DNA of 63,883 nt, counting the filler, from Hyphochytrium catenoides (Eukaryota; Protista; Hyphochytriomycota), in the NCBI GenBank assembly GCA_900088475.1. It is 5 parts of 5 records of this genome, joined end to end, with 100 filler letters (N's around TTAATTAATTAA, not from the genome) between each part and the next. Parts side by side here need not be neighbours in the genome. Positions count along the whole stretch, not along the records: positions 25,340 to 55,991 come from FLMG01002279.1; 4 more parts are not named here. One strand, given 5' to 3'. This document shows positions 25,772 to 54,088 of this stretch, one piece after another. A model generated the notes under the pieces. It saw only the letters and a list, made by a program, of their open reading frames with translations, did not search any database and was not told where the DNA came from. The translations under genes were made by a program, and so were the position numbers. Position 1 is the first letter of the stretch. Each line of letters begins with the position of its first letter.

Positions 25772-28700
25772 CTAAAGGACCAGTGGCCGCCTCTCTTCTC
25801 TGTTGCCCGCCTCTTGCCTAAGAAAAACTGCAAAAGCTGGCGTGATAGCCCAGAGGAAAGTATCCAAGAGGCCCGCCGAGAGATACGCAAGCGTAGCGAA
25901 GAACCGGAGAGATTCTGGAAACGCTCCGCCTCTGACAATGTCAAAGGACCACAGAAGAGCTGGTAAGAGCCACGCAGCTGACCCGCCAACGGTCTAAGGC
26001 ACACAACAGGAAGGAGAAATGTGTGTTAGCTACGGCCAGAGTCCATCAACCTTTTAGCAGGTCTCTAGAACCGACGAGCACGACGTAAGAATTCAGTTGC
26101 CTCAATGGGAAACATGCTTGCTGCATAAGATGATATAGGCAATCGATGAGAGCGTCCTAGGTGTTTAGGTTTGAAAGAGAGGTCAAGTGGAGTGTGGAGG
26201 ACAGAGAAGGCAGATGGAAAGCCCGTCCTTGACTGCTGGCCTCTACGCTTTTCTTCCATTTTCTCCCCGTCTGTTCGTCCGTTCTTCCGAACAATACGTA
26301 CATGGGCTCCCCAAACCTCCTTCATATTTTCTCCTCTCCTAGTAGATTCCATGGAAAAGCGGTCTAGTAAAGCCAGTCCTTTGCGGTAGTTGCGCCAGCA
26401 GTAAAGAGCCAGGACGAAAGAGGGGATAATGAACAGGAGCAGCCGCGGCCATGGCAGCGGTAGCCAGCAATAACTGCAAAAGGGGAAGGCACTTATCAGG
26501 GAGAAGAGCTAACTATCACGCCAATTGGACGTAAAAGCTCTAAATGGGAGGTGTCCATAATATCCAAGCCTAAGATGGAAAACAGCCTGCCCTTGGAGCT
26601 TTTGGCTAATGATGAACTCCAAAGCACAGATTGTCCATGGGAGAGAGAGATAGGTTAGAGGAGAAAAGTTTTTTTACCCAGGTCGTAGGCCCACATCCGC
26701 GGCCTCGCCATACGCGCCAAAGGCTCCACCTAGAACCGCCACACACAAGGAAGCTAAAGTGGCTAAAGAGACTCTGGTGCTTCTGGGTTGGGCGGTATCC
26801 TGCGACTGGAGCAAACAAAGTAGGGATCGAGAGATAAAGAGGTCCAACACTAAGAGCGAGAGAGTGCAGGATTCTTGGACAAGAGCTCCTCCTAGGCACC
26901 AGATAGGGTGATTGAGCCCAGGTAGGACTGCAAAGAGGGGAATGACATAACATTGCGACGACCAGAGACACAATGATTAGTGAGAAGGACCATGGCCGCA
27001 CAGAGAGGACAACGAAGACAGACCGTAAATGGAAAAAGGTGAACGTAGTGGTCAAGAGGAAAGTGCTAACTTCTCACGGAAGTAGAATGGACATCCAGCG
27101 GTCCTATACAGGGCTGAAGAAGAAGGAATAACAGTACAGAGCAGGTACGGTAGGATTTGCCCGAGTAACGGAGAGCGCAGGCCTAGCTGTGGCCAATCGC
27201 GGGTGAGATTACGAGGGGTCCTCGCATAGCTTGATATCGATCTGAAGATAGGAAGATGACAAGCAAATAGAAGGCCCCAGAATAACGTTGAAGGGAAAAG
27301 AAGTACACCATCATTCCCCCCACAACCGCTGCTCGTGCGCCAGCACTCACATGTCATCCAAAAGGACAATTGCCTTAAAATCTCAAGCACGGCCCTCGTC
27401 AAGAAGATTCTGATCTCTGGGGAGGACTGGAGGCTGCTGTGGCGGAGGAAGAGGAAGAGGAACGCCACTGCTCCGCCAACAGAGAGAAGAGAGACGCCGA
27501 CAAAAGGGACGAGCTCGGCAATAGAGACAGGAGATAGAGTGATCCCGGACTCTGCCCTATGTTGTCCCTTACGAGATGAAAGTGCTGCGCCACACCGGGG
27601 CGGGATCGTCCTGACGCATGCCATACCTACCCGTTTGGACGTCGCGTCGAAGAGAGTGTGATAAGTCCTCAGGAATACATCGCCTAGAATCCATTGTCCT
27701 GCCGGTCCTGCCAAAGCGAGGGAAAGGAAGGTAAAAGCGGAAGTGAAGATCACGAAGAGTTTAGGAGCAAAGATCACAGTGACGGAGGCAAGCGGAAGGT
27801 GCGGGAGATGTGAGCTCCTGCAATAGGAACCAAAGGCGAGGAAGGATGTGAAGATAGATGTCCTTCCCTGTATTCATAAGAGGCTCCACACTCCTTAGGA
27901 AGAGAGAGGGTAAGCAAGACTACAGAGCGCAAAGCACTTACCTCCATCGGAGAGAAGAGGAATACAGATTATCCACTGGCAGAAGGTATAATCTGGGCCA
28001 TGGAGCTCGAAAACATGTTCTCCTAGTTCTGTGAGCAAAGTTAGAGTCCAAAACCATGAAGACGGCAGACCAGGAGGCAAGGGCAGACAAGCGTGATGGG
28101 CATTGACATAGATGAAGGGAAGATATGGACACAAGGGCAACATTCTGGTGGGAATATGTCTACCTAAGCGGATCGTTGGGAATTGAGATGGTGTGCAGCC
28201 CACGCATTGATAGCCAAGATTTGTATAGGCGCACGAGCAGAGCTCAATCAACACCTGCAGGCAACCAAGAGTGAGACCCACAAGGAGATGGTATGTCCAT
28301 ACTGACCGTTCCTTTTTCATTTTCCAGAGTAATCAGATGTAGACCTACCTCCATCGCTTTCCAGTATGGAATAGACGGCATAGTGAGGAGGGAGGTACCT
28401 GTATCTACGATCGCTCGGCAGCCATCTGAAATAACAATAAATGGATGTTAAGGGCCACATTTACAGATAAAGACAAGTTATAGAGGCAGACAAGACAGAA
28501 ACGCCACCATCCTCACGGAGGAGAAAACATCCAGGACCTACAATGCTTAGACAACAGCAGTGAAGAGCTTGGTGTGTTATAATCAGTGAACAGAGAGGTG
28601 GTCTTACGGGGACAGAGCTCCTTGTCATGTATGCTGACCGACGGGACGGAGACGGTCCAGAATGTGTAGGTAAAGCCGGTTGATATTACTGGCGAGAAGA

Positions 28701-31700
28701 GCCACTCGGTGCCCTCTAAGAGGCTTGGGGTTAGTTCCAAGGCATCATCTAAGGCATCAAATGCTGGAGTATGAAACCAAGATAAGAGAAGGCATTTCTC
28801 TGTACTTCAGTACAAGGAGACGCAGGAGATCCCCAGCCATTGAGCTGACCGAACGTCAATCAGGAATGAAAGTGCAAGGTAGAGGGACAAGGAGAGAGGT
28901 TGCTCACCCTTTGGTACGAGTGTATTGTCATATCCTCCCAGGATCAGCTGTGAACCCTCACTGTTTGGTTCACGGCTGAGGAAGAAAGAGAACTGGCCAC
29001 GCAGTTCTGGGTGCTGGGAAGAAAGCAGAGAGAAGACAGAGGGCACTGGAAGCGATATGGTAAGTGGAAATATCCTTGAGCTCGGCTACGCAGAAGAAAC
29101 TAAGAAAGTGTCTCGTCGAGCTGTGTCCAGCCTCAGGGCCCAGGATACTTACATAAAGGCAAGAGGAAAACCATGAAAAGGAGGCCATTGAACGAGACTA
29201 CCGCACAGTAACATGAGAGAGACAGGCGCCCACTAACCAGTCACAGTCGCCAAGCCTTCAAAGGCCATTCCCAGGATGCCCTCTGACTGCATGGTTCCCA
29301 TCCGGCCCATCTCCCTCTCAGCCACTCCGACCTTCACCCGATCAACGGCAAGACCGCCAAGGTGCACCTTTCATACAAATTTTAGGACATGGCCGCCGAC
29401 AAGGGTTAAGCAAACGTCTAGAGAAAGACGGAGAGAAGAGAGTAGAATTCTGGTCTGAAGCCATTCTTATATGAAGGAACAAAGAACAGACCAATGGAGT
29501 TTAAATTTGAGCGGTTCCGGACTATGGAGAGGAAGCTGCTTCATGTAAGGCTTGTCTCATGGCCTCCATGCCTTTTCCTCTACCTGCTCTCTAACTATAT
29601 AGCCTGATATCTGCCCACTGCCATAAGCATCTGAGAAGCCATTAGGCCCCGATAACACTGAGGAAGAAGTCGAGGTGGACGGATTATAACGAGCCAGACC
29701 AGCACAATCTACGCAATTTGTGCCAGGAACCTGGACCATCGGAGGGCAAGAGGTGTGATGTGTCAACTCTAAAGCAATAGGTCCATGGCATCGGGTAGCG
29801 AGTACTATTATATAAGATACTAAATGGAACTCACCCAAAAGTCCGCAGACCCAGTGTCAAAGATAACATCGAACGACTGAGGCGGCGAGCCCACCCCAAT
29901 CTCCCCGTAGAATTGCATAGCCCAGTAGTTACTTAGCGGGATGCGAAGGGAATCTGAAAGAAGGTGATGATGAGTCCCCTTGAAAGAGAGTGACGACACT
30001 AATAGCCAACAAAGAACAACCAAGAGAAGATGAGAAGAATCCGCCACAACATGCTTGATGAGACTAACAGCAAGTTCTTATGACACCGCAGCCCACCATT
30101 TTTTTGCAGTGCCTCCAGCCTAGCGCTTAGCGGAGAGTAGGCAAGCAGTTCCGGCCTCGGTGGAGACGACTGGGGAAGGTAATGCGACGCCTTGATGAAA
30201 GATGGTCAGATCCTTCCATTGAATTGCAACCTCTTTTCCCCTTGCTCTTCTGTCTATTACCTGCTCCGCTTTATGGCGATTGACTTTTCTCTTCAAAGGA
30301 ATCTTGTGCAAACCCGTCACTTCTATCGCCAAGTTATTCGCTAACGTTTCAGCAGGCTCTGGAACCCTTTGAGGGTCATTTTGATGGACTCTGTCATCCA
30401 GCATGGACACCTTTGCTGCCCTATTTCTCCTGCGTTTGTACCTGGGCTTTCCTCTTAGCTCGTACGGAGTGCCAAGAGAGATACGTTTGTCCTCTATATG
30501 GTAGGCAGTGGGATACTTTTGTAGGAAAGGCCACCCAAGAAGAATCATCTCCTGGACGCGGATCCCATCCGGGTAGGCCGAGAGCAAGAAGACGATGTGA
30601 GGATAGACAACTATCAGAAGTGCAAGTAAAAAATAAAGCAATGGACACACTCAAAGTCAAAAGAAGAGGTGCACGAGGAGGAACGGCAGGAGCCTCAAGA
30701 AGGGACAAGAGAGCAAAAAGTTGTCAAACGATCCCGGCCTGAGGCCCACAATGTTACTTACAATCTCAACCTCTGATATGAGAAGCTCACAGCTCACTTC
30801 GGTCTCCCGCCCATGGTTACCGCCTCCACAGACAGCATAGTCTTCGCCTTCGAGGATAAACTCTCGTCCTCCAAGGCGGAAGACAAGAGGAGGGAATCTG
30901 TCTCTTTCTTTGCAGTTTCTACAATTGAAGCCTGCAATGGTGCTTTCACAGTCACACAGCGATGAAAGCTCTCGTACTACGGCAGAAAATTCAGAGCTCT
31001 GTAGCCCTATTGTCGGCAAGCCGCTATCTAAACTTGCAAAGCAACCTATTGACGAGAAAGATGGATTAGATAAGCATAGGCGTGGTAGGTGGAGGACATA
31101 ACTGTTTACTCACAGAAGAACTACAGGATCAAAGATGAAGACCAAAGCAGAGTGGACATCGAGAATCATCACCTCTTGGGCAAAATTCGTGCCGTCCTAG
31201 CCGAGTAGAGGTAACCTCCACAGTCCAGTAGCGGTGAAAGGGTTCTTCGTTAGGTGAAGGGGAAGTGGGAACAAGCGGCAGGGAAAGCCAGGACGTTCCG
31301 TCTCCGAGGCATTTAGGGTGTACCCCTCCAAGAACCAACGCTACTTCCCAGTCCTTTTCCTGTCTTTCTCGACTTTCCTCTCGTTTGGAGGTCACTGAGC
31401 GAGCACAGAATGAAAATGTAGGAGGAAGTGACTCTTCTTTCATCAGCCTCCACACCATATTCTCCCGCGTGATCCTGCAAAAAATAAAGGGCAAACAACT
31501 AAGACTAGGCCAAGCAATAACATCCGATCCTGCCCGCCAAGGCACGTGAGCAAGAGAGGCGTACAAAAATAGAGAGCTATGCATCCACCAAATAGTTGTA
31601 TGGCACTCCAAGGATATACGGAAAGGGATGAAGGGGTACATAGCCTGAGAGTTGTCAAAGGAAAATCATGACCTAGACAGTCATACATGGGTGCGGAGAG

Positions 31701-34700
31701 CCTAGGCAAGAAGATTTGGTTGAGGAGGAGAACAATGGAATGGGCATTTGACAGCAAAAGTAGACAGAAACTTACTTGCCGAGCTGGGGGAATGCTAAGC
31801 CCACTATGCCGTCAGCCGCTAGCTCCCCTAACATGCCAACTTCACGCTCTGCGACACCCACCCGTACATCGGTGAGAGAGAAAGAGGAGAGATGAACCGT
31901 GTCCTGAAGAGAGGCACAGGGGAAACAGGAGCAATAAGTTCCATGATGGCTTTCGTCAGACAAATGCAAAACGTTAACGAGACAGTGGGCGAAGAAGAAC
32001 CATACGGTAAGCACGCCAAAGGCTTAGAAAGACCCTTACCCTAATGACGTAACCCTCGACTATCCCACTGCTATAGCGGTTCTCGAACATCTTGATGTTT
32101 CCTTTTTTGGTTCTATCTCTCTCGGCTGTTCTAGAGGCTTCTAGGTCAAACTCCGCACGACCGGCACAACGACGACAATGCCGCCCTGGTATCTAGAAGC
32201 ACCCATCACACATATAGAGCAAGGAGTGAGCCTTGAGTCGCACCAGAGCTTGCCTTCTACTCTTCAGCCGGACGAAGTCCTTCTTTCACTTACCCAAAAG
32301 TCAGCTGAGGCTGTATCGAAGACGACCTCAAACTCCTGCGGAGGTGTGCCGACCGAGGCTATGCCCACAAAGGGTGGTCGGTCAAACTCAAAGACCCATT
32401 TCGAGGGATGAGCCTTCCTATACGTGACTCTGTGAGTAAAGGCAATGATAAAGGGACAGGTCTGCCCCAATCGACAAGGGTAGATAGGCACTTAGGGATG
32501 TCAACGTAGAGCAGTCCACGGCAGAGAAGAAGAGGCAGAGATATGAATGGGACCTGGTTTACAAAGCGAAAAGAAGCCGTGACATCCATCTCAAGGCCGT
32601 TCTTAGCATGACGTGCAAGTTACCATAAGGGGACAACGATAATATTGTCTCGTTCATCTCTTTTATATTGCTGATGGACAGATGAATAGTCCCATCCGGC
32701 GAGGAAGCGCAAAGAAGTGAACAGGGCATCTGCAGACGACAGCAGATCTTCCGTCCCGCAGTGTAACCTTTTTGTAGGCGGAAGACTAGGAGGCGGAACA
32801 GAAGAGGAGACTGGACTTGAGGAGGCAGGAGGACAAGCGAAGCCCATTCTCTTTCCATCGGCATCGAATAGGGTGTAATAGTTCTTTAGAAAGGTGTCTC
32901 CAAGCACCCAAAAAGCCTCATAACCCACAGAGGAGAGAAGAAGAAGGCAAGATGTTCCTTGACACAATGTATAGGCAGATCCTGTCAAGGTGAGGAAGGC
33001 CCCGCCAAGGAAGGAGAAGCGGAGGGCAGGGAAGTGATCCGCCTCGCACTTGTTGCACTACAAAGCGCGAAAGTGTGGGGCCCCAATTAGTATAAGAGAG
33101 TAGGATAGTCCTCCAAGGCGACGGTAGGATAGGGACAATAGTCAGGACCTGCCCCTTTCAGGTTACTAGGGAGTTGATCAATGAAAAGAGACAAAGAAAG
33201 TGGAGGGTCAACGCAGAGGTTGTTTCCTAACGACGTAGCCGAGGCCGCTGTACCTGAATCGCGTACACAGAGAATCGACAACCACACGTTTCTTTCAGGA
33301 GAGGCAGAAGGCGGGCCAGGTAAGGCTCAGGAACACCGATGAGAGATGTTCCCGTATCTACAATGGCCGTACAGCCTAGCGGTATGAAACAGACAGGTGA
33401 GGGAAAGGCCGGAAAGTGTAAGACCAGAGATAACTAGAGGCAATTGGACGCGAACTGCACGCTATCTCCTCGTTCCCAAGCTCTCTGGAACTCTGGAACT
33501 GGTAAGTGTTGTTGCCTCTCATTATCAATCTTTCCCGTTCATCGTCAGCTTCTTTCCGTAGTAGTCCTTGCCACTTCCAACAGCTTCTCACTTTCATCTA
33601 CAGAATGTAGCTGCATACCGTAAGGGCAGATGTTATCTGTTCCAAGGCTCACGGCCAGCGCCTTGATTGTCCAGTATGTGAAGTCTTCCCCGGAGGACAC
33701 GAGAGGAGTGAAGAGCCATGTACTACCTTCGGCCACCAAACTGCGTAGAGGCGGATAGGGACAAAAATGCGTTAGCATGGTGAGATCCCTTTTGTCATTG
33801 TTCGTCACTAAATACTCAAAAGAAAATATAAGGAACAGAATGTATAGTCCCTCTATTCTCGCCTTACCTATTGTCTATGCCACCAATAACCAACTTTGAA
33901 CCCTTAGAATTAGGCTGGGCGGAGAGGAAGAAAGAGAATTGCCCGCTGATCTCAGGATGCTGCTCTAGAAGACCAGAGAAGACTGTCGGCACCGTGTAGC
34001 TGGAGACATGGGAGAACGAGTCAATCAAACTTCAAATTGTGCACAAATGCCTGTCATCATGATCGTAGCGTGCATGCATCGGCCCTTCTGAAGATCCCAA
34101 GCAGCCACACAACGAACTCTTTCCTTGCTGTCCACGGATGCGACCGCTTCCTTTACGAGGTGTTGTTCACATTATATCGACAGTAGCGGTTTGCGTGTTC
34201 GCATTGGCTCTTCGTTCCTCACCTGGCAATAGCTGGGAACGCCATCCCCATAACCCCATCGCATTGCAAATGTCTTATATCCTTCGCCTCAATCTCAGCT
34301 ATTCCAATCGTCACGTTCTGCACTTTCAGTCCACCCAGTCCGACGGTGTCAACACCTACAACCCCCAGCACAGCGCCGCTGACTAGAAACAGAAATCATC
34401 ATATAGGCAGGCGGAGTAAGGGCAAACTGAGTAAAGTATGACGTCACTTTGAATTCGTGTACTAAAGTCTAACAGTACGACAAACAAATGGAGACACCCA
34501 GGGATAAATTGGAGAGGAACGCAAGAAATAAGACAGCACAAGCAATATGGAAGTAGACAATTGTAGCAACAAGGCTGGGAGTGAAGTCAGAGCCCGTCGC
34601 ACAGAGAGGTCCTATACAGTACAGCTACCATAGTTATTGACGAAATATCTCCTAATGCTTCTGGGACTAAACGACCGGGACTGGCTGACGTCGAAGCGAT

Positions 34701-37700
34701 TCTTTCCTGCACATTGCCGGCAGTAGATACCAGGAACCTGAATAGGAAGAAAGGTGTCAACGGGATCTGCTGAAAAAAGAAAGTAGAAATTTTTTAGTCA
34801 TTGCACGACAATCATAACGAGTAAGCAAAGAGATGCTCAACTGGGGAATAGAGATGGCGGCCAGAAGGCAGATTGTCTCACTGCAGAGATACTAGTGGCA
34901 GCTTGAGTAACCTGATTACAGGTGTACAGATGGTTAAGGGTAGGATGCATCGTTTAGAGAGATCGGCCAGCTAGGAGGGTAACGGTGGTGAGGAGGCCCA
35001 CGTAAGTTGTGACGTATCTTACCCAGAGATCAGAAGAACCGGTATCAAAGATAACCTGGAACATCTCCCCGGCGTCCCCTAAGGAGACGTTCCCCACAAA
35101 TTGGAAGCTAAAGAAGTTCTCTAAGGCTATCGTCTCGCGCACTTGGAAGGCTGAGTGGTGAGGAGTCGTCCCAGTGATTGGTGAGCACGGGCTGATGGCG
35201 AGTCAAGAAGATGGAATATAGGCTAAATATGGTCTTACCCTCCGTTTTAGTGGGCATGACGCTGGAAAGGAGAGCTCCTTTCGGGCTCTGAATGGCTTGC
35301 AGAGGGATGTGCAGGAGACTAGGTGTTTGTCCTTCGTTTTGACCTTAAGTGAGAGCAAGTCAGGAAGTGGAGGCAGAAGAGACTACTAAGGCTTGAGGGA
35401 TCAAAAGCAACCTTTCTGGAAGTGTGACTCCAGCCTCACTGTCTTAAAGAGCCAACTTAAGGGTGATTGTAGAGAGAAGGAGGGGGGAGGACTAGTCCCG
35501 CATGTTTGATCTGGAGGACAGAGGAAATGAAGACTCCTCTTTCCCACATCAAAGACGGTGTAATACTCCTTCAGGAACACATCGCCTAATATCCACAGGT
35601 TCTGACGGCGGAAGATATCATAGATAAGCGTGCTGGTCGTCAATAGATAGAGGTATATCGGAGAATCTTGTTGAGCCGTCAGAGGAGCATCAGAAGCATG
35701 GACTCTAGCTGGAGGAAGCCTGATAGTGTGGAAGACTGATGTAGACTCAGTCGGCAAAAGCGGATAAGAAAAGAGGCACCCGGGTGCAGCAAGCTCGAGA
35801 CAAAGCTAAATAGTTGACTTCAGTATGCCAAAAGAAACGAGCCTTGCCTGCATTCCGGCACTGGCAATCATCAGCTGGCAGTAGTGCTGGTAGCAAGACG
35901 TGTAACTTTGCCCTGACAGAGTAATAAAATGTCCGCCGCTGAATGTGAGTCGCAGAGGGGGAAAGTCCCTGCCTGTGAGGACGGAATCAGTAATAAATGA
36001 GCATCACCACCATGCTCATCTTTCTAGGTGAGATGGCCTTCAGTCCTTAGTAAGAGTCATACGTCCTTCCGGCTATCTATTTGCCTTGATTGTCACCTAT
36101 CTCTAGTGTCTTTATCATTCGTCAGAGGCCATTGCTCCTATCTCACCTTCGCATCCCATGCAGATGTATCCCCACATCGTGTACCTGCATTGGCACCTTT
36201 GGTTCACGGACCGGAGCAGAGCGCGATAGGCACCCGGAGGCAGAGCTAAAAGGGAGGTGCCAGTATCAACTATGGCATGAGCCCCTGGAGTGCCAAAAGT
36301 AAATACGTCTTAGGCAACGTCTATAGGAGCTGAAAGACCGCAGTGTGATATCGAGGGGTTGAGACTGGGGTTCGCTGATAGAGGAAGAATAACCCTATGA
36401 TCCACCGATTGGTTTGCACCTCAGTCTCGCGAAATTAAAATAAGAAAGCGAGAGAGGACCAAAGAGCGAGAAAAGAAACAGCTGCCTCTCATTCATGAAA
36501 ACGTCGAATGAACTTCTAGTCAAGACAGAAGGTGCTACCATTGAGAAGAGGACATAGAAGTGCCTGAAAATGACTATCGCGCTTCAAACTTACCTGGACG
36601 ACATAAGCTGACGGATCCATAGACGCATTCTTGCATTTCGACCGCCCAAAATGTCAGCAGACCAAACACTGGGGTGATTGGGACCGAGAGCCATTTGCTT
36701 CCTTTCGGAACGCGAGAGGGGTCATACCCTCCAAAAGCTAGCTCTGAGCCCTGAGAGTTTGGCTCCTTTGATAGAAAGAAAGAAAATTCAGGAGCAAGAG
36801 TAGGATATTCCTCCAAAAGTCGTGAGAAAAGGGTGGGACGAGTAAACCTGTGAACAGATGGAGCGATAGTTATACAGAGCAGCCACGCCATCTGTTGGGA
36901 AGAAATCTAAAGGATTCAGGAATTAAGGCGGGATAAAAATGAGGCCTCCGGACGGAGCGGCTTACAAATAGAGATCAGCTCCTTGCAGAGTGATAGGGGA
37001 ACCATTCGAAGCTGTAATGGGTTTGGCGAACTTAGGATAAGCTTACTGAGCTAGAGCTTCAAAGGCCATTCCCGCAATCCCATCAGCTCTCATTGCGACG
37101 AGAGGACCGCTTTCATAGGTCGCCACCCCAAAAACAGTGCTTGGGATCTCATACTGTCCAAGGTGGACTGTATCTCTCGCAACAAACCCCACACTATCTC
37201 CACTTCCATAAGAGTCCTGAAAGGTTATAAGACGGCGATCAGGAGTAAAGGCAACCTCCAAAGAAGACGAATTCGATGGGAAGAAGCGATGTGTCCCGGC
37301 ACAAGTGGTGCACATAACACCTGGGACCTGAAATCAGGGGGGCAAGGAAGAGAAAGTCAGATCATAGAGGCACGCTGTGGCGTTCCATGGAAGCAGAAAG
37401 AACTTTATCAAGGTTCAAGGGAGCTGACTGCTCAATAAGAGAGGGATGATGTATGAAGTGTAAATTAGTGTATAGCAAATAGCAGAACGTTGTTATAGCG
37501 GCCTCGTCGAGAGGGTTCGCGAGGATAGCGAAAGGGACTCTTATGCAAACGGAGAACAAGAGGCTTGGAGCAGCGATGGAAGTCTTTGAGCCTACCCAAA
37601 GGTCGGAGGAGCCGGTGTCGAAGATGACTATGAAGGTCTGTGGAGGAGTTCCAAAGCTGATCTTGCCCAGGAATTGCAGCTCGTAGAAGTTCGTGAGATT

Positions 37701-37964
37701 GATAAAAGAGACATTGGCAGCGAGATTCAGCGAGTCCATCACTCCCTGTTCTTCTCCTAAGTTCGGACCGGTTGCGCCCTGCCATCTTTTGGGCAAGCCC
37801 CAAGCGTCTGGGTGCTTCCGTTGAGCTATGAGGGGAACTTGAAGCAGTTCACGGCTATTACGAAGCGTGGGACCAGCTGAAAGAGCACACTGGGCCAGAT
37901 AGGCCGCAGCTGTTAGTAGAGTTACTCCTAGAGGGCACCATCGGCCCGCTGGTACAGCAAGCAT
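25772..37964 (-). CDS. Signal peptide, four tandem pepsin-family (A1) aspartic protease domains, and a cAMP-receptor-like 7TM GPCR domain
   Basis: Catalytic Asp codons: D1 DTGS 37617-37619 / DTGT 36265-36267; D2 DTGS 35044-35046 / DTGT 33356-33358; D3 DTAS 32315-32317 / DSGL 31026-31028; D4 DTGS 29856-29858 / DTGT 28403-28405. Each domain has CxxC, a flap Tyr, G-h-h-G-[ML]-AF and a hydrophobic-LG motif. 7TM exons 27351-27707, 26678-26927, 26317-26473, 26085-26120 (or -26156) and 25772-25993 splice in phase. The D2-D3 junction (about 32430-32620) is the least certain. Confidence 0.82.
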
Positions 37965-42867: not shown

Positions 42868-45800
42868 ATGCAGTGCATGATGACCCCAGCCAAACGGCGC
42901 ACCCTTCACGGTGCAGCCAAGCGACCTCGCGTCTTGGGAGAGGAGAACCGGCAGGTGGGGCAGCGCATCTCTGTGAAAGGTGCCTCAGTGCACCTGACAG
43001 AGGGTATGAAGTGCTTCTCTAAGGACAAGCCGAAGAAAGCAAAGTATATCAACTCTCCAAGGGCGACGATCAAAGGTCAGTAGCGAGACACTCCTTCCAG
43101 AGCCTTTCATTATCCTTTGGGGACGTGTTTGTTCTCAGTAATCTACCCGGCGTTGTTTCGCACCGACTCCCCTTGCTTCGGCTTCCTTCTCCTCGCTACT
43201 CCTTCGATAATTTGCATTGTTCAGAGGCCTTATTCTCTCTGTTGCCTTCGCTCTCCATCGGGATGTCCACTCTCCTTAAAGATATCATGCCACCGCAATG
43301 TCTGGAGCAAGTGCTCCTCAGGGTGACGTCTCCCTATCACATTCCGTTTTAAGTGACTGATATAGCCTACCTTCGACGCTCTTTCAAACCATATGAAAGT
43401 CAACCGTAACCTTAACCCTTATGATTTTTGGGTCCGCTCTCTTCTCGTCTCTGTTTGTTTGCCGCCCAGATGGATTCTACTGGCTTCAATCGCTAGGACT
43501 TGGGCCCCTTTGCTTTCTGGGCTTTGTCTGCTATAATCTCCTGGTTTTGGGCTTCGGTCTTGGCGTATTAGCTTGTGGCTCCGATCCGATGTAAGTCTTA
43601 GGAAGAGTAGCGGAGTAGAATGTCCCCAAAATTGAGGCGGCATACTTTGGATGAAATGACGGCGAGATCAAATGAGCACGAGAGCTGTTGATGAGATCGC
43701 TCCGCGAGGCAAAGGGCCGAGATGGGCTCGATCAATCAAATCCAAAGGAGCTTAACGTCGTTAGGGAAGCAAGATATAGCTTAACTCTGGGAAAGGTTCG
43801 AAGAAAGTTGAATAAGAAGGAGGGGAGGACAGATCCCCTTGAGAGGCATGAAGAGTGGAGCAACCCTCATTCTAGACTCACTCTCCGTCCACAGCAAAAA
43901 CTTTTGGGACGCCTACAATATGTCCTTCCAGACGTTTGCAACAATAGGTTAGTCTGGTGGACATCTTTCGCTTCTCGATCCTGACTTCTCCCGCTCTGCT
44001 CCTGCCCTCTTGTCAAGGAGCCAGCTCTATCTCTTTCTGAGTCATCATAGGGTCTATTTCATCCACACACGACCTTTTCCTAAGTCTCTCGTATCTATAG
44101 GCTATGGATATCTATACCCGTCTGACGAATGCAGCAACATTGTAATCTCAGTGGAGTCGACGGTCGCAGTGCTCTACGTTTCCTTTTTCATTGGCGTCGT
44201 CTTCGCGAACGTCACTAGACCAACTGCAGCTATCCAGTTCAGCGAGGTATTCTTCTCTTCGTGATGGACCCCCTTCATCTCTCTTCTCTAGGTCTTCTCC
44301 CATGTTGAAGGGGGAGTACGTAATGAACTCTCATGCTGATTAACATGTGTTTGCGCGGAGTTTCTCCTCTACCAGTACCTGAGATGGCCTAGCCCTTGTG
44401 ACATCCTGATGCTAGGAAGAGCTGGCTTTCTCGGGGGAAACACTCAATCTGCCTTTGTCTTCTATCTTGCCCTATCGCCTCCTAGCGTCACCTACTTCTT
44501 TTATCTAACAGGGATGTCTTTGATGTCGGTGCCTAACATCCAGGTCTATACAATGTCCTATATTGGTGGCAAGCTCTGTATGGTGGTTCGTGTTGTGAAT
44601 TGTCATTTGTCTCCCCGCTTTCACAACGGAGAGCTCATTGAGGTAGATTTCAAGATGAAAGTGAGCCGCCTAGAGGTACGATAGGATATATGGATTCATT
44701 CTCATTGCTCGGCGCCTACCTACCTTTCGCTGTCTATGAATTCTATGCTCTCTCCCCTTCTTTCTTTCTTGCCTGACAGTTCCTGGTCCTCATCAGATCT
44801 TCGCATCGTCCTTTCGTTTTCGTCGTTTCTTTTTTCTCCCCATAAGCGCGACGATGGTGGTAATCTCAAGATATACAAGTACAACTTGAAGCTTCTGAAC
44901 AACAGCTTCCTGACTTTTAGGTGCGTAGAGCGTGGCGGATCGTCTTTGCTGCTGTTATTGTCTCATCCCGCTGTAAGAAGTTGTGGAGAGGGGCCATAAG
45001 AATAATTACCTCCCTAACTCATGTCTGGTTGCTATTGGTCTTTCCTTTCTGAGGTCTTTGTCCCTAGGCATCTGTTGACCTCTAATCTGTCTTCCTCGTT
45101 GTCCTCAGGACCTCGCTGTGGTTGGTACATCCTATTGGAAAACAGAGCCCTTTCTATGGAATGTCAGAGGAGGTAAGGGTACATATTGCTTAGGATACGA
45201 AGTTTTCTGTCCTCTGAGTCTGCTGACGTTCTTCATGACAGACCTTCAAGAAGCAAGATATGATGATTGAGGTTATCATGACGGGTAACGCTTGCATCGG
45301 ACGCTTTTTCTTTGCCTCTTGGATTTCGTGTTGTACCGCTTGTAGCTATTTTCCTGCTCACCCCTGCTCTGCTCCAACTTTCTCAGTTCCCTGACCATTC
45401 CTCGTACCATCCTCTAATTCCCACCCATCTAGGAGTCGACCTCACTGTTCAAGACACCGTGGCCCAGATGCACACATATTACCCGGAAGACAGTAGGTGG
45501 CATCAGCGGTAAGAGACCGAGTAGCTGCGAACGCTGCATTGTGCCGCCTTTGATTCGGGCTCCGTTCGTAATCCTACCCTCAATGGGGTACTCAGACCGT
45601 CTGCATCCGCGCTTCTATTCTGTCACCTTCGACAGTCTGTGCGTTCTCATCTCTTTCCTTCCGCGTACTCGGACTAACTTCATCTGGCCTTAGGTTCGTC
45701 CGCATGGGAAGCTTTTCTCTCAGGGGTAGGGAGATAATTCAAGACTTCTCCAAGATTGACGTATTGGAGGCTGCACCGTTGAAAGGACAGCGAACCACGT

Positions 45801-48800
45801 TGGCCCAGTTGCAGATGGCGTCCACCCCATTGGCTACTCACAAGGAGGGGAAGAAGGAGGATGTAAAGGAGAACGAGGGAACAACCAACACCGTCCCGAC
45901 TGCAGGGTAGGTTCAAATGGGAATAAGAACATGGATACCAAGGTCCAGGAAGATAGAGTGGCTCATGTGAGCGAGAAGAAAAGGCGCACAGACTGCGTGA
46001 GTGGGCTCAAAGTAGAAGCGTCGAAGACTGGAATTATGAAAAGGGAGAAAGATTCATGAAAAAGAGAACATAGAGGGTCAAGGCGTAGTGCGTTCTTGCA
46101 TCTCCTGCTTGCTCTTACTTCCTGAGGTACATAGTGCCGTGAGAGCACTCGGCAGTGATGTTACTGACTATCTTCCTCTAACCACGTTCTGGCAGCTCGA
46201 CGGACGGCGAGAGTGAGGGCCGAGAAAGTGCTGAAGAAACGGGAGAAAGGAATTGCACTGAAGAAGAAAGGGAGGATGAAGCACTTCGACAAGAGCTGAT
46301 GGCGGAGGAAGGCCCAGGCGCCCTCGAAGAGTTCCCTTATGCCGCGTCGCACAAGAGACTCACAGAGTTTGACATCTATCAGTACGTTCGCACCGCTTCC
46401 TTCTCTCATAAATTGAAACCACTCTGGACCAGATGGAATTTTATGACGCTTTTTATCAGATTTCTTGAAAAAGGCTATTCCTAAGCAAGAAGATCACTAT
46501 CGTTACAGTGTCCTGCTGCGACCCAACTGACCTAGGCCCTTATAATTGTTGTCACAGACGATGGAATTCAGATACAGGGAGTCGACAGGACTCAAGGGGA
46601 AGGGGAGGGGAGAAAGGACGGCCCCGAATTCCTACCTTTTCTCCTACGCAGCCACCTTCTGCATCTGACAGTACCTATAAGTTCATGCCCTCACCAACCA
46701 CTCCCACCATTCCAGAGCTACATCACGCAGACTCGTCTCTCTCTGTCAACTCCACGAGGACCGAAGAAGACAGAAAAATGGAAGAGGAACGCAAGGCCAG
46801 GGCTGAAGTGGATGCAGAGAGGGCGCAAAAGACAGTTAGTGACTACGCCGCTCTTCTTCTAGCGCGCCTGACTGCCGAAGACGAAACGACTTCACAGTAC
46901 TCTGCCCAGCACAGCCTAAAGGCAAAAAAGGGTGGAGAGCATAGGGGCCCGCCTCGGCGCTTTTTCTCTTATGCGCGAGACCTCCATCCTGGGGAAGAAG
47001 AAGAAGAGGAGGAAGAAGAAGATGAGCTCCCTATTCTGTAAGTACAAGAGCATGAGAGAATCTTCGTTTGTCTATCTGATCTTCACTTTCAGCCCGCGCT
47101 TTTCTTCGAGTATGCCGCCCTAACAGCTGTTTCTAACGTTGTTTGTCCATCTCTCCGACTGTACTCCCTCTTCGCTTTTGTCTGTCATTACACAGGCCAC
47201 AGATGGTCCGTACGACCAATCGCAAGGGTTGGCTATTTCGCTATGGCAGTGTCTACTCTCTTCTGATGGGTCTCAAGTGGGGGCCTCTCCTTGTCGTCAC
47301 GCTCTTCCTATACTGGGGGTCAATAACAATATTTGCCCTGTTCTACTATATTGAGGTACCCGAGCCTTCTGCACTTCATATTCTTCTCCATGTCTGAGCT
47401 CTCAGCTGATAATCTCTTACAGCGGATGTTCTGTAAGGTTATATCCTTTGCGCCTCTCCTCCTCCTTGAAATGATGCTAGAAGGTTGATTGTGCTTAAGT
47501 TATCTCTCTCCACGCCTGTCCATGGCGGCCCCTCTCTATCTTGTGTCGGGTCACGCAGAAATCTCCTACTCAGCTCTTGCATGTTCGTAGGCGGAGGATG
47601 TGGGAAAGAACTTCCAGTCGGCCGAGCCTATGGGAACTTTTACCCGGTGTCTCTATTTTAGTGTGCACACCATAACCACAGTTGGGTAAGAACTGCAGAC
47701 GAGAAGCGCGGAGCGTACAGATCAGTCAAAATGTTAAGGTGCACCTTCGCAGAGGCATTCGATTGAAAGGAAGAGGGAAAAAAACATGAAGTACAATTTA
47801 TGGGGAGATGAGGAGCTGGCTGTGTGGGTGTGGGAGAGAGAGAGAGAGAGAGAGAGAGAAAAGAGTAAGAGCAACGATACAGTTTCTGACGTCTGACGCC
47901 TATTGCTGGTTAGGTACGGGATCCTCTATCCCAACCCAAGCGGCCACTTCATTAATATTCTGGTTCTGCTGGAGACCTTCACCAGTCTCTTTATTACCAC
48001 GCTCATGACAAGTTAGTAACTGCTACCCTTTGCATTTCTTCCCCCAGATCAGAGGCAGGCTTGGCACGTCGTGGCGTCGTCTCTGCTAAGCATACATGTC
48101 TTTGGAGAATCTATTGAAAGTTTGTCTGCTCTGTCTGGTTGCTCCTCCCTATAGCACCACACCAGTTTCGCCCATCTGGAACTCCACCCTACCACTTTCT
48201 CTTCAATGATTTTTAAGACAGTAATCGGTTGTGCTCTTGCTCAGGTGTTACATGGAGCAAGGCTTCCATTCCTAAGGGCAAGCTACTATGGAGTCAAGAA
48301 GTAGTCTTTGCTCGAAACCACAAGGGACAGAGGGTCATGCAGTTTCGCTGTGCAAACCTAAGACCTCTAGGAGAAATGATACAATGTTCCTTCAGGTATC
48401 CTCTTGAGGCCTGCGAATTCCGTGTTGACAAGCTTTGGCTGCCTTTGTTGCCTCTCATATTGATGCATGACTGAGTCCACAACTTCCTTCTTCACAGTAT
48501 GCTACTTCTCCGATCTCCTTCCTGTTCAACCTGTACAAACTTCCTTCAACCGCAGTTCTACCTGCAGGTCAAAGTTCTCCTCTGAGGTGCTGTTCTTCTT
48601 CGGCTATGAAATCCTCTAATTGTTGCCCTTTGATGCCCTTATCCTTTCCGCCCCCGCCCTCATATTTCGCCGATTGGCTCACGACTCTGCACGTCGTAGG
48701 GTCTGCATTGCCTCGACAAACTCGTACCATGGCCTTCGTTTGGGCCTTCAGGACCTGACTCTTACGGAGTCTAGCTTTCCAACCTTCCATCATCCAGCCC

Positions 48801-49303: not shown

Positions 49304-51253
49304 CGCCCATGGAAAGAAGCTCTTATAGCTTCGCCAAGGTGTACTAGGTAGGTATATAGGGCTAGTGTACGAATGTTAACCGTAGGCTGAGGATGCAGCG
49401 CTACAGAAAGCTCGTCCGCTTGCCGTTTCTCCTCTTAGGCACGTTCCGTACCATATCTGAACCCCTTTAATGCGCATACTAGCTCCCGACACATGTACAA
49501 CTAAGAATATAATACACAGCTGCTACTAGTAAACGCCTGTAAAAGCGAGTGACATGACTTGAATGACTATATCAGCCCGTCGCCTCATCATCTGCAGCCA
49601 CTCTCTGCAGACCTCAGCGCGGCTCCAGCGTCCTGCACTTTCCCCTTGTTTTTTGCTAGAGATAGGATGATACCAATGAGCAAAACAAGGCCAAAAGGCC
49701 CAACGCCGTTGGTGCCTCAGCAACAAAGAGAAGAATGCCCGCCCATGGCTCCCATCATTCCCGATAAGATAAGGCAAAACATGTACTTGTAAAACGGTAG
49801 TTGGATGAGTGTCTTGAAGCGCCGAAGGTGCGTCAACTGGCGGACTCCCAATGTTCAGACAGGGCGAGAAGTCGCTAACCGCACTACTGGTGCGTACACT
49901 TTCTGAAAGTGTTGTGTCACTAGTAAAAATACTTTGACATGCCTCGTGCGCACATTCTCTGGCGGCAAAAGAAAGGCGGACTGAGTAGTCAAATGTCCAA
50001 CCCTCCAAGTCAAAAAAGTGCTGTATAAGAAGGATGGTGGAAAGAGGAGCCGAAGGACTATCATAAAACGAATTGAGAATACCTTAGGTTGATACCTGTA
50101 ACAGGAATCGCATTAATATACCAAGGTAGGTTTTTGGACGTGGAGTCTTTGAGGCATATTGTGACACTGTCACTGTATAGCGACTATTAGAGGACACTGA
50201 GGCACAATCAAGCCAGTCAAGCTTTCAGTTGGTGCATCACGCTGACAAATAGGCTCTTGGTGGCGTATCCTCTGGTAAATTGTTCATCACCTATATAGGT
50301 AATGTGGATAAGGGCGGCATATTATTAGAAAGATGGGGGTGACCAATGTAGAGGATAAAAAAGTTAGCTCCTTCGCTGATTGGACAGGACTAGCCAATCA
50401 ACACTAAGCGGTTAATCAGTAGGGTATTATAGCCTCTCTGGGTGTCTTTAAGCCTTACAAGGCGGCCTACGTTAGGCTAATTGCGTCTGTTGATGGAATC
50501 ATGGTGGCTACAGGCTGGTCTCGCTCTCTCTCTCCGCTTGCTGGCTCTGATGATCTCTTTAGGTATCTCTTCTCTCTCTCTCCTCATCTCTCTCTCTCTC
50601 TCTCTCTCCTCTTTCTCTCCCTCTCTCTCTTTCTCTTTCTCTCTCTCTCTCACCTCCACTCTCTCTCCCTCTTCCCCCTCCTCTCTCTCTCTTTCTCTTG
50701 GTGGCTCTCTTTCTCTGTTCACCTTTCTCTCCCTTATCACACAATGAACTGTCTTGCTGGCTCTCTTTTCTTCTCTCCTTCCATCATCCTTGGTATCTTA
50801 CTCCATCTCTCATTCACCCTCTCTCTGTTCTATTTCCTATTTCCTCTCTCTCTCCATTCTCTCTCACACACTCCAGTCTCTCTATTGCTGTCTCTCACCT
50901 TCTTCTTCTCCTGTCCAGGTCCCTTCTCTACTGTGTCCGTCATCTTTCTGGCTCCTAACGCCCTCTCCTCTTCAATGCAAATTTGTATTCCTCTCAGCAC
51001 TTCAAGCACTGAGAGTACCCTCGTTGTCTCTTGCTCATCTTTGCTTTCTTACTCTCTCTTCGCAGTTCGTTCACCTGCCGCAGACAGATCAATCTCCTCT
51101 CTTCTTCCCATCACTTTGTGACAATAGCGGGCCTGCATCCGGCTGGCCTGACGCCAATTGGCGTCTTTCTGAAGCAGAACAGTGCCTTCAGCTTTAGTGC
51201 TTTGCTGTGTGACTGAGGAGGTATTGCTGTTTGTTAAGAGAAAGAGGGAAATA

Positions 51254-53622: not shown

Positions 53623-53662
<40 letters not shown>

Positions 53663-54051: not shown

Positions 54052-54088
<37 letters not shown>

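What the first reader, a model, noticed from the sequence alone, without database searches (positions are those of the whole stretch)
25772..37964. GPCR carrying four tandem aspartic protease domains in its ectodomain
Seen: after the fourth pepsin domain ([16 protein letters not shown]) the same exon runs into TM1 ([22 protein letters not shown]) and TM2. Four further in-phase exons supply TM3 with its top Cys ([24 protein letters not shown]), TM4 ending GAYG, ECL2 GYCWL, TM5 ([17 protein letters not shown]), TM6 ([19 protein letters not shown]) and TM7 ([20 protein letters not shown]). TM5-TM7 are invisible in the ORF track. Established: YG..CW plus the TM7 G-L-x-[ND] pattern typify cAMP-receptor/GCR1-like GPCRs, and oomycetes such as Phytophthora have a fusion of a single aspartic protease with a GPCR (AP-GPCR). 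Inference: this is a quadruplicated AP-GPCR of roughly 1,900 aa (estimate), possibly a receptor activated by its own proteolysis, or one coupling protein digestion or acid pH to G-protein signalling. I know of no described four-domain form.
Basis: partly seen in the sequence, partly recalled or inferred. Interest (0 to 1): 0.93.

Follow-up and report, generated by a model that had tools for sequence, protein, structure and literature searches.

The report
Four-protease receptor gene, probably one transcript
A 12-kb, 33-exon gene appears to encode a single membrane receptor carrying four pepsin-like protease units outside the cell; this type was known only with one protease unit and only in oomycetes, and no transcript data yet prove the four units are made as one protein.

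Summary
On the minus strand, 37964 to 25772, I built an in-frame model of 33 exons and 32 introns (31 GT-AG; intron 5 probably GC-AG). It encodes 1,925-1,928 aa.

The protein has a signal peptide, four pepsin-family units and a Cys-containing stalk. A 7TM domain follows, collinear with that of oomycete AP-GPCRs (PiAP5 type, Dicty_CAR-like).

- **Subtype:** all four units carry the AP-GPCR-specific CxC...CxxC insert.
- **Origin:** the units form one clade (99/95), are 34-46% identical to each other and share three intron positions. This is an old internal quadruplication, not an assembly artefact.
- **Catalysis:** D1, D2 and D4 keep full catalytic motifs. D3 is degenerate (DTA, DSGLP) and probably inactive.
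- **Firm junctions:** D4 to TM1-TM2 lies in one exon. D3 to D4 is one ORF plus the strongest in-frame splice in that gap.
- **D1 to D2:** D2's propart exon has no start codon or signal peptide and lies 60 nt after D1's stop.
- **D2 to D3:** this junction rests on weak splice sites.

No spliced RNA was found; the one contig from a run guessed to be RNA is unspliced. Searches found only single-unit forms of 682-1,012 aa, all oomycete where named. The verdict is a new variant of a known kind, with function inferred.

The parts
25772..37964 (-). Whole gene model: 33 exons, 32 introns of 68-423 nt (31 GT-AG; intron 5 probably GC-AG), CDS 5,787 nt = 1,928 aa. Start ATG at 37964, stop TAG at 25774-25772.
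   Evidence: Spliced alignment to P0004 plus manual junction checks. There is no internal stop.
37875..37964 (-). Signal peptide, aa 1-30 ([30 protein letters not shown]). It is the only start-plus-signal-peptide found for the four units.
   Evidence: Hydrophobic core aa 10-30. An in-frame stop lies three codons upstream of the ATG.
35518..37874 (-). Unit D1: propart (aa 31-87, LLQVPL start motif) plus pepsin domain (aa 88-420). Motifs FDTGSS, YGSG, VDTGTS and WILGD are intact.
35131..35517 (-). D1-D2 linker with D2 propart (LLHIPLQ). It includes exon 7 (35343-35239), bounded by a strong donor agg|GTAAGA. The segment has no ATG followed by a signal peptide and begins 60 nt after D1's in-frame stop.
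   Evidence: Several in-frame splice options exist and all of them join D1 to D2.
32833..35130 (-). Unit D2 pepsin domain (aa 498-823). FDTGSS, VDTGTS and WVLGD are intact. The flap reads YVSG in this model, and its junction is uncertain.
32405..32832 (-). D2-D3 linker (Pro/Ser-rich, [22 protein letters not shown]) with intron 14 (32767-32430). This is the weakest junction of the model.
   Evidence: Donor aag|GTTACA scores 3.0 and the acceptor 4.7, against a training minimum of 3.7 for donors. A rival start, MDVTASFRF..., lies inside the intron.
30468..32404 (-). Unit D3, a degenerate pepsin domain (aa 854-1207): FDTASA, YSSG, LDSGLP, LLGWPF. It has no propart and a very long tree branch.
29943..30467 (-). 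D3-D4 linker with the basic cluster [10 protein letters not shown] and D4 propart (LHKIPLKRK). It is encoded in the same exon as the D3 C-terminus (30551-30261). Intron 20 (30260-29979) has strong sites.
   Evidence: One stop-free ORF spans 30650-30123. Donor 8.1 and acceptor 10.3 give the best in-frame path by a wide margin.
27616..29942 (-). Unit D4 pepsin domain (aa 1289-1614). FDTGSA, YGSG, VDTGTS and WILGD are intact.
27517..27615 (-). Juxtamembrane stalk (aa 1615-1647) with the C-x(7)-CG motif shared with oomycete AP-GPCRs.
25826..27513 (-). 7TM domain (aa 1649-1911):
- TM1 27513-27445
- TM2 27414-26920 (split by intron 29)
- TM3 26901-26812 (WC at the top)
- TM4 26775-26707
- ECL2 YCW
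- TM5 26448-26383
- TM6 26087-25931
- TM7 25909-25826
   Evidence: blastp to P0005/P0007 gives 53 bits over 274 aa against shuffles of 19 +/- 2. A family HMM gives 30 bits, E 8e-6 at Z=1e6, over model positions 32-294 of 303.
25775..25831 (-). Short cytosolic tail (19 aa), as in P0004.

Best explanation
This is one 33-exon gene for a protein of about 1,925 aa.

**Architecture.**
- It starts with a signal peptide.
- Four tandem pepsin-family (A1) units of the AP-GPCR subtype follow.
- Then comes a short Cys-containing stalk.
- It ends in a cAMP-receptor-like (Dicty_CAR/GPR157-like) 7TM domain with a 19-aa cytosolic tail.

**Origin.** It is a lineage-specific, ancient internal quadruplication of the [propart + protease] module of the AP-GPCR known from oomycetes (PiAP5).

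**Shown here.**
- The four domains and their catalytic motifs.
- The 7TM homology.
- The physical continuity of D3-D4 and of D4-TM1/2.
- The lack of any start codon with a signal peptide for D2 and D4.

**Inferred mechanism.**
- The signal peptide places all four units outside the cell or in an acidic lumen, tethered to the receptor.
- D1, D2 and D4 are zymogen-like proteases that low pH would activate.
- D3 is a non-cleaving, peptide-binding pseudo-protease.
- Propart removal at the inter-unit linkers could shed the outer units or create a new N-terminus.
- Proteolysis or peptide binding in the ectodomain would then be reported by the 7TM to a G protein.
For: - **Model.** A complete stop-free model has 32 introns, 31 of them GT-AG.
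- **Pepsin identity.** Seven of the ten ORF pieces scanned hit PF00026. Each unit aligns to most or all of the P0004 pepsin domain.
- **Subtype.** All four units share the CxC...CxxC insert and the FT.P motif with oomycete AP-GPCRs; D1, D2 and D4 also share the terminal Cys. Ordinary pepsins lack them.
- **Old duplication.** The units are monophyletic (99/95) inside the AP-GPCR clade (100/100). They are 34-46% identical to each other and share intron positions at alignment columns 37, 140 and 246. The duplication is therefore old and the reading frames have been maintained.
- **D4 to 7TM.** The D4 C-terminus, TM1 and TM2 are in one exon.
- **D3 to D4.** The D3 C-terminus and the D4 propart are in one ORF. 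The splice that follows has the best donor and acceptor in the gap and is in frame.
- **Proparts.** The propart start motif L-x-[IV]-P-L precedes D1, D2 and D4, as it follows the signal peptide in oomycete proteins. D2 and D4 have no Met or signal peptide of their own.
- **No room for separate genes.** Only 60-190 nt separate each in-frame stop from the next unit's first exon.
- **7TM.** 53 bits against shuffles of 19 +/- 2; family HMM E 8e-6. P0004 hits PF05462 in my own scan, and P0004, P0005 and P0021 carry it as a precomputed domain.
Against: - **No transcript support.** No RNA run was listed for the 5.9-kb stretch. The single contig laid comes from a run guessed to be RNA (X4, about 96% identical). 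It covers 30158-30422 and runs unspliced across the predicted donor at 30261.
- **Weak donors.** Introns 6 and 14 score 1.9 and 3.0, below every training intron.
- **In-frame paths are common.** Hundreds of in-frame splice paths exist by chance in the D1-D2 and D2-D3 gaps. Frame compatibility alone therefore proves little.
- **Codon bias is uninformative.** It does not separate the linkers from the read-through ORFs.
- **Direct family test missing.** Exons scanned singly give no Dicty_CAR hit, and the spliced protein could not be given to the Pfam, TM or structure tools.
- **TM2.** It falls below a simple hydropathy threshold.
- **Activity.** No data bear on protease activity or G-protein coupling.
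Confidence: 0.68

Rival explanations
1. The locus gives two or more separate or alternative products. For example, a secreted D1-D2 protein could end at the stop at 32620, and a D3-D4-7TM receptor could start from an exon inside intron 14. Another form could end at 30123. Only two units, or one, would then be tethered to the receptor.
For: - The D2-D3 junction has the weakest splice sites.
- An ATG-initiated [26 protein letters not shown]..., lies in intron 14 and can be spliced in frame to D3.
- A signal-peptide-like mini-[20 protein letters not shown], lies in intron 20.
- The one contig from a run guessed to be RNA is unspliced at the exon 20 donor.
- The read-through ORFs have codon scores no worse than the linkers.
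Against: - The gaps are only 60-190 nt, too short for a 3' end plus a promoter plus a signal-peptide exon.
- D2's and D4's proparts are encoded upstream without any start codon.
- The rival first-exon splice sites score no better: donor 3.6 and acceptor 0.6.
- The mini-ORF in intron 20 would need a 32-nt intron (my count from the sequence), while the shortest intron in this gene is 68 nt.
- The unspliced contig has depth 2.9 and may be genomic DNA or pre-mRNA.
Confidence: 0.2
2. The gene is a single one as modelled, but the four pepsin units act mainly as non-cleaving ligand-binding modules, like pregnancy-associated glycoproteins, Bla g2 or TAXI-type inhibitors. The protein would then be a peptide- or protein-binding receptor rather than a protease-receptor.
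For: - D3 has substitutions in both active-site motifs and in the psi-loop (DTA, DSGLP, LLGWPF) and a very long branch.
- D2 may have Val in place of the flap Gly.
- Kay et al. discuss inactive, membrane-bound pepsin homologues as possible surface receptors (PMC3116508).
Against: - D1, D2 and D4 keep both Asp-Thr-Gly motifs, the flap Tyr, the DG..G.AF and W.LGD.F motifs and proparts after roughly 55% sequence divergence. This argues for selection on catalysis.
Confidence: 0.2
3. The 7TM part is only a membrane anchor or sorting module and does not signal through G proteins. The gene's role would be to deliver several pepsins as a polyprotein to the surface or to an acidic compartment.
For: - The cytosolic tail is only 19 aa.
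- TM7 has D where relatives have N.
- Basic clusters in the linkers (KRRRNR, TKR) could be processing sites.
- The organism's G-protein complement is unknown.
Against: - The 7TM is conserved collinearly with all oomycete AP-GPCRs. This includes the TM3-ECL2 Cys pair and the TM7 motif.
- A single helix would suffice as an anchor.
Confidence: 0.15
4. The locus is an unexpressed or decaying gene, a pseudogene.
For: - No spliced RNA was found.
- D3 is degenerate.
Against: - The 5.8 kb of coding sequence across 33 exons has no stop or frameshift.
- Splice sites are intact and catalytic motifs are kept in three units that are only about 45% identical.
Confidence: 0.04

Closest known systems
[quoted passage not shown] Sources: Kay et al. 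2011, PMC3116508; van den Hoogen et al. 2018, PMC5784254.
   Same: - The order of parts: signal peptide, propart, A1 pepsin domain, short Cys stalk, then a 7TM of about 300 aa of cAR/RpkA type with a short tail.
- The AP subtype markers (CxC...CxxC insert, terminal Cys).
- A function that is equally unknown. Self-processing was proposed for PiAP5.
   Different: - This gene has four [propart +] AP units instead of one, and one of them is degenerate.
- The protein is about 1,925 aa, against 682-1,012 aa for the 28 database members.
- The gene has 32 introns, whereas the P0004 gene is a single uninterrupted ORF on a compact contig.
- The lineage falls outside the Peronosporalean clade.
- The literature states that AP-GPCRs are restricted to oomycetes, with one copy per species. 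The source organism here is not identified.
Dictyostelium cAMP receptor / GPR157-like GPCRs (Pfam PF05462 Dicty_CAR)
   Same: - The 7TM family to which the AP-GPCR receptor part belongs. P0004 hits PF05462 in my scan, and P0004, P0005 and P0021 carry it as a precomputed domain. The nearest Atlas clusters are of this family.
- The TM3-ECL2 Cys pair and the TM7 S-x-G-L-L-[ND] motif are present.
   Different: - Those receptors have short N-termini and bind small ligands.
- No direct Pfam hit was obtained on this window's exons.
Protease-activated receptors and adhesion GPCRs (tethered-ligand receptors)
   Same: A functional analogy only: cleavage in the ectodomain could unmask or remove a tethered element that controls the 7TM.
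   Different: - There is no sequence relation.
- Here the protease would be part of the receptor itself.
- None of this was tested.
Inactive pepsin homologues (pregnancy-associated glycoproteins, Bla g2; Phytophthora PxAP9)
   Same: D3 has substitutions in the DT/SG motifs of the kind discussed for these peptide-binding, non-cleaving proteins (PMC3116508).
   Different: - D3 keeps both Asp residues and the flap Tyr.
- It sits inside a chain of apparently active units.
Tandem pepsin units in one ORF or contig elsewhere (P0002, 772 aa with two [propart+pepsin] repeats; metagenome contig L002)
   Same: They show that head-to-tail pepsin zymogen units without intervening signal peptides occur in other organisms.
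   Different: - They are ordinary pepsins without the AP-GPCR Cys insert and without a 7TM.
- The two P0002 units are near-identical, so they may be recent or an artefact.

Membership tests
Pepsin-like aspartic peptidase, MEROPS A1 / Pfam PF00026 | Significant match to the family profile over both lobes | tested here: met
   ORF pieces of D1, D2 and D4 hit PF00026 with E from 1.2e-5 to 4.9e-11; the one D3 piece scanned gave no hit. Each of the four units aligns to P0004, starting at residues 42-64 and ending at 377-390; P0004 itself hits PF00026 at 1e-70.
Pepsin-like aspartic peptidase, MEROPS A1 / Pfam PF00026 | Two catalytic Asp in D-[TS]-G motifs plus the flap Tyr75 | tested here: met
   D1, D2 and D4 have DTG and DTG plus Tyr. 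D3 has DTA and DSG plus Tyr, so the feature is met for three units and doubtful for D3.
Pepsin-like aspartic peptidase, MEROPS A1 / Pfam PF00026 | Proteolytic activity inhibited by pepstatin | not testable with these tools
   Needs expression and an enzyme assay.
AP-GPCR (PiAP5-type GPCR-bigram) | Pepsin domain and 7TM domain on one polypeptide, with the AP at the N-terminus | tested here: met
   The D4 C-terminus, stalk, TM1 and TM2 are in a single exon, 27707-27351, with no stop.
AP-GPCR (PiAP5-type GPCR-bigram) | AP domain of the family's own subtype | tested here: met
   The units share the CxC...CxxC insert and, in D1, D2 and D4, the terminal Cys. They fall in a 100/100 clade with 28 oomycete AP-GPCR domains, separate from ordinary pepsins.
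AP-GPCR (PiAP5-type GPCR-bigram) | 7TM homologous to the family's 7TM | tested here: met
   An HMM built from 28 family 7TM regions hits model aa 1655-1920 at 30 bits, E 8e-6 for Z=1e6. blastp gives 53 bits against shuffles of 19 +/- 2.
AP-GPCR (PiAP5-type GPCR-bigram) | A single AP domain, preceded by a signal peptide and propart | tested here: not met
   There are four AP units. Only D1 follows a signal peptide, and D3 lacks a propart. The gene is therefore filed as a variant, not a typical member.
AP-GPCR (PiAP5-type GPCR-bigram) | Restricted to oomycetes, one copy per genome (as published) | not testable with these tools
   The organism is not identified. The intron-rich gene and its tree position outside the Peronosporalean clade suggest a deep oomycete or another stramenopile. 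Only a 30.6-kb piece of the genome was available.
cAMP-receptor-like GPCR (Pfam PF05462 Dicty_CAR) | Profile match above the gathering score | tested here: inconclusive
   ORF pieces holding the 7TM exons gave no Dicty_CAR hit, and the spliced protein could not be submitted. The link is indirect, through P0004 (24.1 bits against a cutoff of 21) and the precomputed PF05462 domains of P0004, P0005 and P0021.
cAMP-receptor-like GPCR (Pfam PF05462 Dicty_CAR) | Seven transmembrane helices, N-terminus outside | tested here: inconclusive
   Six segments pass a Kyte-Doolittle threshold. TM2 is amphipathic and is supported only by alignment to relatives. The signal peptide fits an outside N-terminus. 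No dedicated topology predictor was available.
cAMP-receptor-like GPCR (Pfam PF05462 Dicty_CAR) | Coupling to heterotrimeric G protein | not testable with these tools
   Needs experiments and the rest of the genome.

The most novel reading that the evidence does not exclude
The protein is a 'poly-zymogen receptor'. One polypeptide would cut its own inter-unit proparts on acidification. That would release up to three pepsin-type modules and leave a protease-bearing or newly unmasked cAR-like GPCR. Extracellular proteolysis or pH would thus be wired directly to G-protein signalling. It would occur in a lineage outside the crown oomycetes, which would extend AP-GPCRs beyond the group to which they are said to be restricted.
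Probability: 0.2. Interest if true: 0.8.

Novelty: new variant of a known kind. Interest (0 to 1): 0.6.

Why it matters
AP-GPCRs are an unexplained class of receptor with a built-in enzyme. They have been described only from oomycetes, always with one protease domain, and no function has been shown.

A form with four units, three apparently active and one degenerate, gives a natural experiment. It shows which parts are conserved: the propart, the Cys insert, the stalk and the 7TM.

The degenerate unit suggests that peptide binding as well as cleavage matters. It also makes the self-processing idea testable, by asking which fragments stay attached to the receptor.

If the source is a non-oomycete stramenopile, the published statement that AP-GPCRs are restricted to oomycetes would need revision. 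The fusion would then predate the oomycete radiation.

Tried and rejected
**RNA evidence.**
- The first run search, on 5.9 kb, listed no RNA run.
- The second, on one exon, listed one run guessed to be RNA from another organism label. It yielded a single 268-nt unspliced contig, so transcript structure stays untested.
- Three small runs with the same species label laid nothing.

**Database look-ups.**
- The exhaustive representative search with the D4-TM1 exon gave only four distant hits. This genome's own proteins are therefore not in the library, and the single-exon query had low sensitivity.
- The exact-product look-up of the first-exon ORF found nothing on record.
- The metagenome scan with the last D2 exon found no orthologue, only an unrelated tandem-pepsin contig.

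**Analyses that did not discriminate.**
- Codon log-odds, meant to tell linkers from read-through ORFs, were too noisy on 1.7k training codons.
- My first reading of a 'DRY-like' frame ([12 protein letters not shown]) downstream of TM2 was rejected. Homology to P0004 and the strong GTGAGT donor place that stretch in intron 29.
- The aligner's first choice for the TM6 exon (26116-26051) was rejected in favour of the micro-exon plus 25993-25772, which matches RLLASY...LPS in relatives.

**Organism.**
- The neighbouring ORFs gave only a Kir-like channel.
- Hyphochytrium catenoides fits in intron statistics. Its paper's supplements mention no matching gene, so identity is not shown.

**Artefact.** Assembly or recent-duplication artefact was rejected: the units are only 34-46% identical and no tandem DNA repeat was found.
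Full report
**1. What is there**

The piece is eukaryotic, about 49% G+C, with canonical GT-AG introns. The feature lies on the minus strand.

Stop-to-stop translation shows four sets of pepsin hallmarks.

| Unit | N-lobe motif | C-lobe motif | Psi-loop motif |
|---|---|---|---|
| D1 | FDTGSS 37622 | VDTGTS 36270 | WILGD 35595 |
| D2 | FDTGSS 35049 | VDTGTS 33361 | WVLGD 32910 |
| D3 | FDTASA 32320 | LDSGLP 31031 | LLGWPF |
| D4 | FDTGSA 29861 | VDTGTS 28408 | WILGD 27693 |

Seven of the ten ORF pieces scanned hit Pfam PF00026.

An exhaustive HMMER search used the exon that carries the D4 C-terminus plus TM1-2. It found only four proteins at E <= 0.001.
- One of them, P0004 (682 aa), has a signal peptide, one pepsin domain and a Dicty_CAR 7TM. 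It is therefore a single-unit AP-GPCR.
- tblastn of P0004 against the locus gives four successive full passes over its pepsin domain, then the 7TM.

**2. Gene model**

I wrote a protein-to-genome spliced aligner and ran it with P0004 as the guide. I then checked every junction on the sequence.

The result:
- 33 exons and 32 introns: 31 GT-AG, with intron 5 probably GC-AG.
- Introns of 68-423 nt, median 198.
- CDS of 5,787 nt, giving 1,928 aa with no internal stop.
- ATG at 37964, preceded by an in-frame stop three codons upstream.
- Stop codon TAG at 25774-25772.

Two details are uncertain but do not affect the architecture.
- Intron 5 is better explained as a GC-AG intron (cag|GCAAGG, exon 5 ending at 35848). 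That gives 1,925 aa and restores the spacing seen in D2 and D4.
- The 36-nt micro-exon 26120-26085 has a weak donor, and skipping it also keeps the frame. Its product, RQLNSY, matches RLLASY of P0004.

**3. Are the four units one protein?**

*D4 to 7TM.* This is certain at the DNA level: one exon, 27707-27351.

*D3 to D4.*
- The D3 C-terminus, a basic linker ([10 protein letters not shown]) and a propart-like segment (LHKIPLKRK) lie in one stop-free ORF.
- That ORF is followed by donor cag|GTAATA and acceptor ctttcaag|. A matrix built from 28 confident introns scores them 8.1 and 10.3.
- This pair is in frame and is far ahead of every alternative.

*D1 to D2.*
- The exon that carries D2's propart (LLHIPLQ...) ends in a strong donor, scoring 9.9.
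- It begins 60 nt after D1's in-frame stop.
- It contains no ATG followed by a signal peptide.
- Several in-frame ways to join it to D1 exist, and all of them fuse D1 to D2.

*D2 to D3.* This is the weak point.
- The best in-frame junction (aag|GTTACA ... ctcacag|) scores only 3.0 plus 4.7.
- An ATG-initiated ORF in intron 14 could give a separate first exon, though with sites that score no better.

*Independent arguments for one polypeptide.*
- The propart start motif L-x-[IV]-P-L follows the signal peptide directly in oomycete AP-GPCRs. It recurs before D1, D2 and D4, without any Met or signal peptide of their own.
- The gaps between units, 60-190 nt, are too short for a gene end plus a gene start.
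- All 33 exons are intact, although the units have diverged to about 45% identity.

*Against.*
- No spliced RNA could be found.
- The one contig from a run guessed to be RNA (268 nt, about 96% identical, depth 2.9) runs unspliced over the exon 20 donor. It could be genomic DNA, pre-mRNA or an intron-retaining form.
- Codon bias cannot decide between linkers and read-through ORFs.

I put about 0.68 on one mRNA carrying all four units plus the 7TM. I put about 0.9 on at least D3-D4-7TM being one protein.

**4. What kind of domains**

*Identity.*
- D1, D2 and D4 are 44-46% identical to each other.
- They are 39-44% identical to the AP domains of P0004, P0005 and P0006 (Globisporangium polare).
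- They are 29-36% identical to ordinary pepsins.

*Subtype markers.* All four units carry the CxC...CxxC insert and the FT.P motif that mark the AP-GPCR subtype. D1, D2 and D4 also carry the terminal GF.C.

*Phylogeny of 34 domains.*
- The AP-GPCR type is one clade (100/100).
- The four window units are monophyletic (99/95).
- They sit in a polytomy with a Peronosporalean clade (Pythium, Globisporangium, Lagenidium, Phytophthora, downy mildews) and with P0004+P0005.
- Long branches, D3 above all, call for caution.

*Shared introns.* All four units share the intron at column 37 (phase 0). The introns at column 140 (phase 2) and column 246 (phase 1) are shared by D1, D2 and D3, with D4's lying one to three columns away. 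The duplication therefore copied exon-intron blocks and is old.

*D3.* It is degenerate (DTA, YSSG, DSGLP, LLGWPF; about 33% identity). Substitutions in the DT/SG motifs are what mark inactive pepsin homologues such as PAGs and Bla g2 (PMC3116508). D3 is therefore probably a non-cleaving module. That step is inference.

*The 7TM.*
- The spliced 7TM aligns end to end with P0005/P0007: 53 bits over 274 aa, with WC at the top of TM3, YCW in ECL2 and Y-x-S-x-G-L-L-[ND]-x-F-x-W-A in TM7.
- Shuffled controls give 19 +/- 2, maximum 30.
- An HMM of 28 oomycete 7TM regions hits aa 1655-1920 with E 8e-6 for a database of a million.
- Family membership in Dicty_CAR is indirect. P0004 hits PF05462 in my scan. 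P0004, P0005 and P0021 carry it as a precomputed domain. The nearest Atlas clusters are cAR/GPR157-like.

**5. Comparison with what is known**

- Kay et al. 2011 described PiAP5 as an unprecedented fusion of signal peptide, propart, AP and a 322-residue 7TM. They proposed self-processing.
- van den Hoogen et al. 2018 state that every oomycete has a single homologue. They found no similar protein outside oomycetes.
- A database search that allowed lengths up to 1,580 aa returned 28 family members of 682-1,012 aa. All are oomycete where named, and none is long enough for two AP units plus a 7TM.
- Full-text searches found no paper describing multiple AP domains on a GPCR.
- Proteins longer than 1,580 aa could not be searched for directly, so more distant multi-unit forms are not excluded.

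*Organism.* It is not identified. Three leads point to a deep-branching oomycete or another stramenopile:
- the 32 introns, whereas the P0004 gene is a single uninterrupted ORF;
- the tree position;
- a neighbouring Kir-like channel whose nearest Atlas clusters are from diatoms and oomycetes.

The intron statistics of Hyphochytrium catenoides fit (3.64 introns per gene, mean 208 bp). That is a lead only.

**6. How it most likely works**

*Shown.* The topology-determining parts are present: a signal peptide, four lumenal or extracellular units, and the 7TM. Catalytic motifs are conserved in three units, and proparts are present.

*Inferred.*
- The units are made as tethered zymogens.
- Low pH would displace the proparts.
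- Cleavage in the linkers could shed outer units or change the receptor's N-terminus.
- D3 may hold peptides without cutting them.
- The 7TM would transmit this state.

*Rivals.* Separate or alternative transcripts, a purely ligand-binding ectodomain, or a 7TM used only as an anchor. They are listed with the tests that would refute them.

**7. Verdict**

Transcript continuity is not demonstrated, and the function is inference.

It is a new variant (four units, one degenerate, intron-rich gene) of a known but poorly understood kind, the AP-GPCR. Interest 0.6.

Noticed in passing
window 43953-44681 (+): There is a Kir-type (inward rectifier) potassium channel gene fragment here. It has the selectivity filter SIGYGY, a weak PF01007 hit (E 1.9e-4) and a likely cytoplasmic-domain exon downstream. 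The nearest Atlas clusters are from diatoms and oomycetes.
   Followed up: partly
window 47834-47859, 50587-50608, 52240-52255, 53623-53658, 54052-54087, 55975-55990; N run 53618-53622: There are many (CT)n/(GA)n microsatellites, and long Ser/Leu-rich pseudo-ORFs lie in the 50-55 kb part of the piece. A 5-N assembly gap sits directly beside one (CT)18 run.
   Followed up: no
window 30000-30050 (-), inside intron 20: A mini-[20 protein letters not shown]-stop, looks like a signal peptide. To serve a D4-only isoform it would need a 32-nt intron, shorter than any in this gene. It is probably a pyrimidine-rich intron read by chance.
   Followed up: partly
window 32490-32595 (-), inside intron 14: An ATG-initiated [30 protein letters not shown]..., could in principle be spliced in frame to D3's first exon. 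It is the only candidate for an internal start.
   Followed up: partly
window 35839-35848 (-): There is a likely GC-AG intron with donor cag|GCAAGG. The GT alternative 9 nt downstream scores -5.4.
   Followed up: yes
window 30158-30422: A 268-nt contig from a 2024 run of another organism label (kind guessed as RNA) is about 96% identical, with 10 mismatches and a compensating 1-nt deletion and insertion at 30223 and 30233. A soil metagenome run also holds 12% of the words of this exon. Close relatives therefore exist in environmental samples.
   Followed up: partly
L002:85-2023: This 2-kb metagenome contig carries the C-lobe of one pepsin followed by a complete second pepsin unit on the same strand. 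It is about 33% identical to D2 and lacks the AP-GPCR Cys insert. It may be another tandem-pepsin gene.
   Followed up: no
P0002 (772 aa): This library protein has two nearly identical [propart + pepsin] units in one ORF and a single signal peptide. It is either a precedent for a pepsin 'poly-zymogen' or an assembly artefact.
   Followed up: no
L001:1-14049: The contig that encodes the single-unit AP-GPCR P0004 is compact, and the AP-GPCR gene on it is a single uninterrupted ORF. Its neighbours include Stealth/Notch, DSPc, LRR and EGF-like genes. This is an oomycete-like organisation, in contrast to the 33-exon gene studied here.
   Followed up: no
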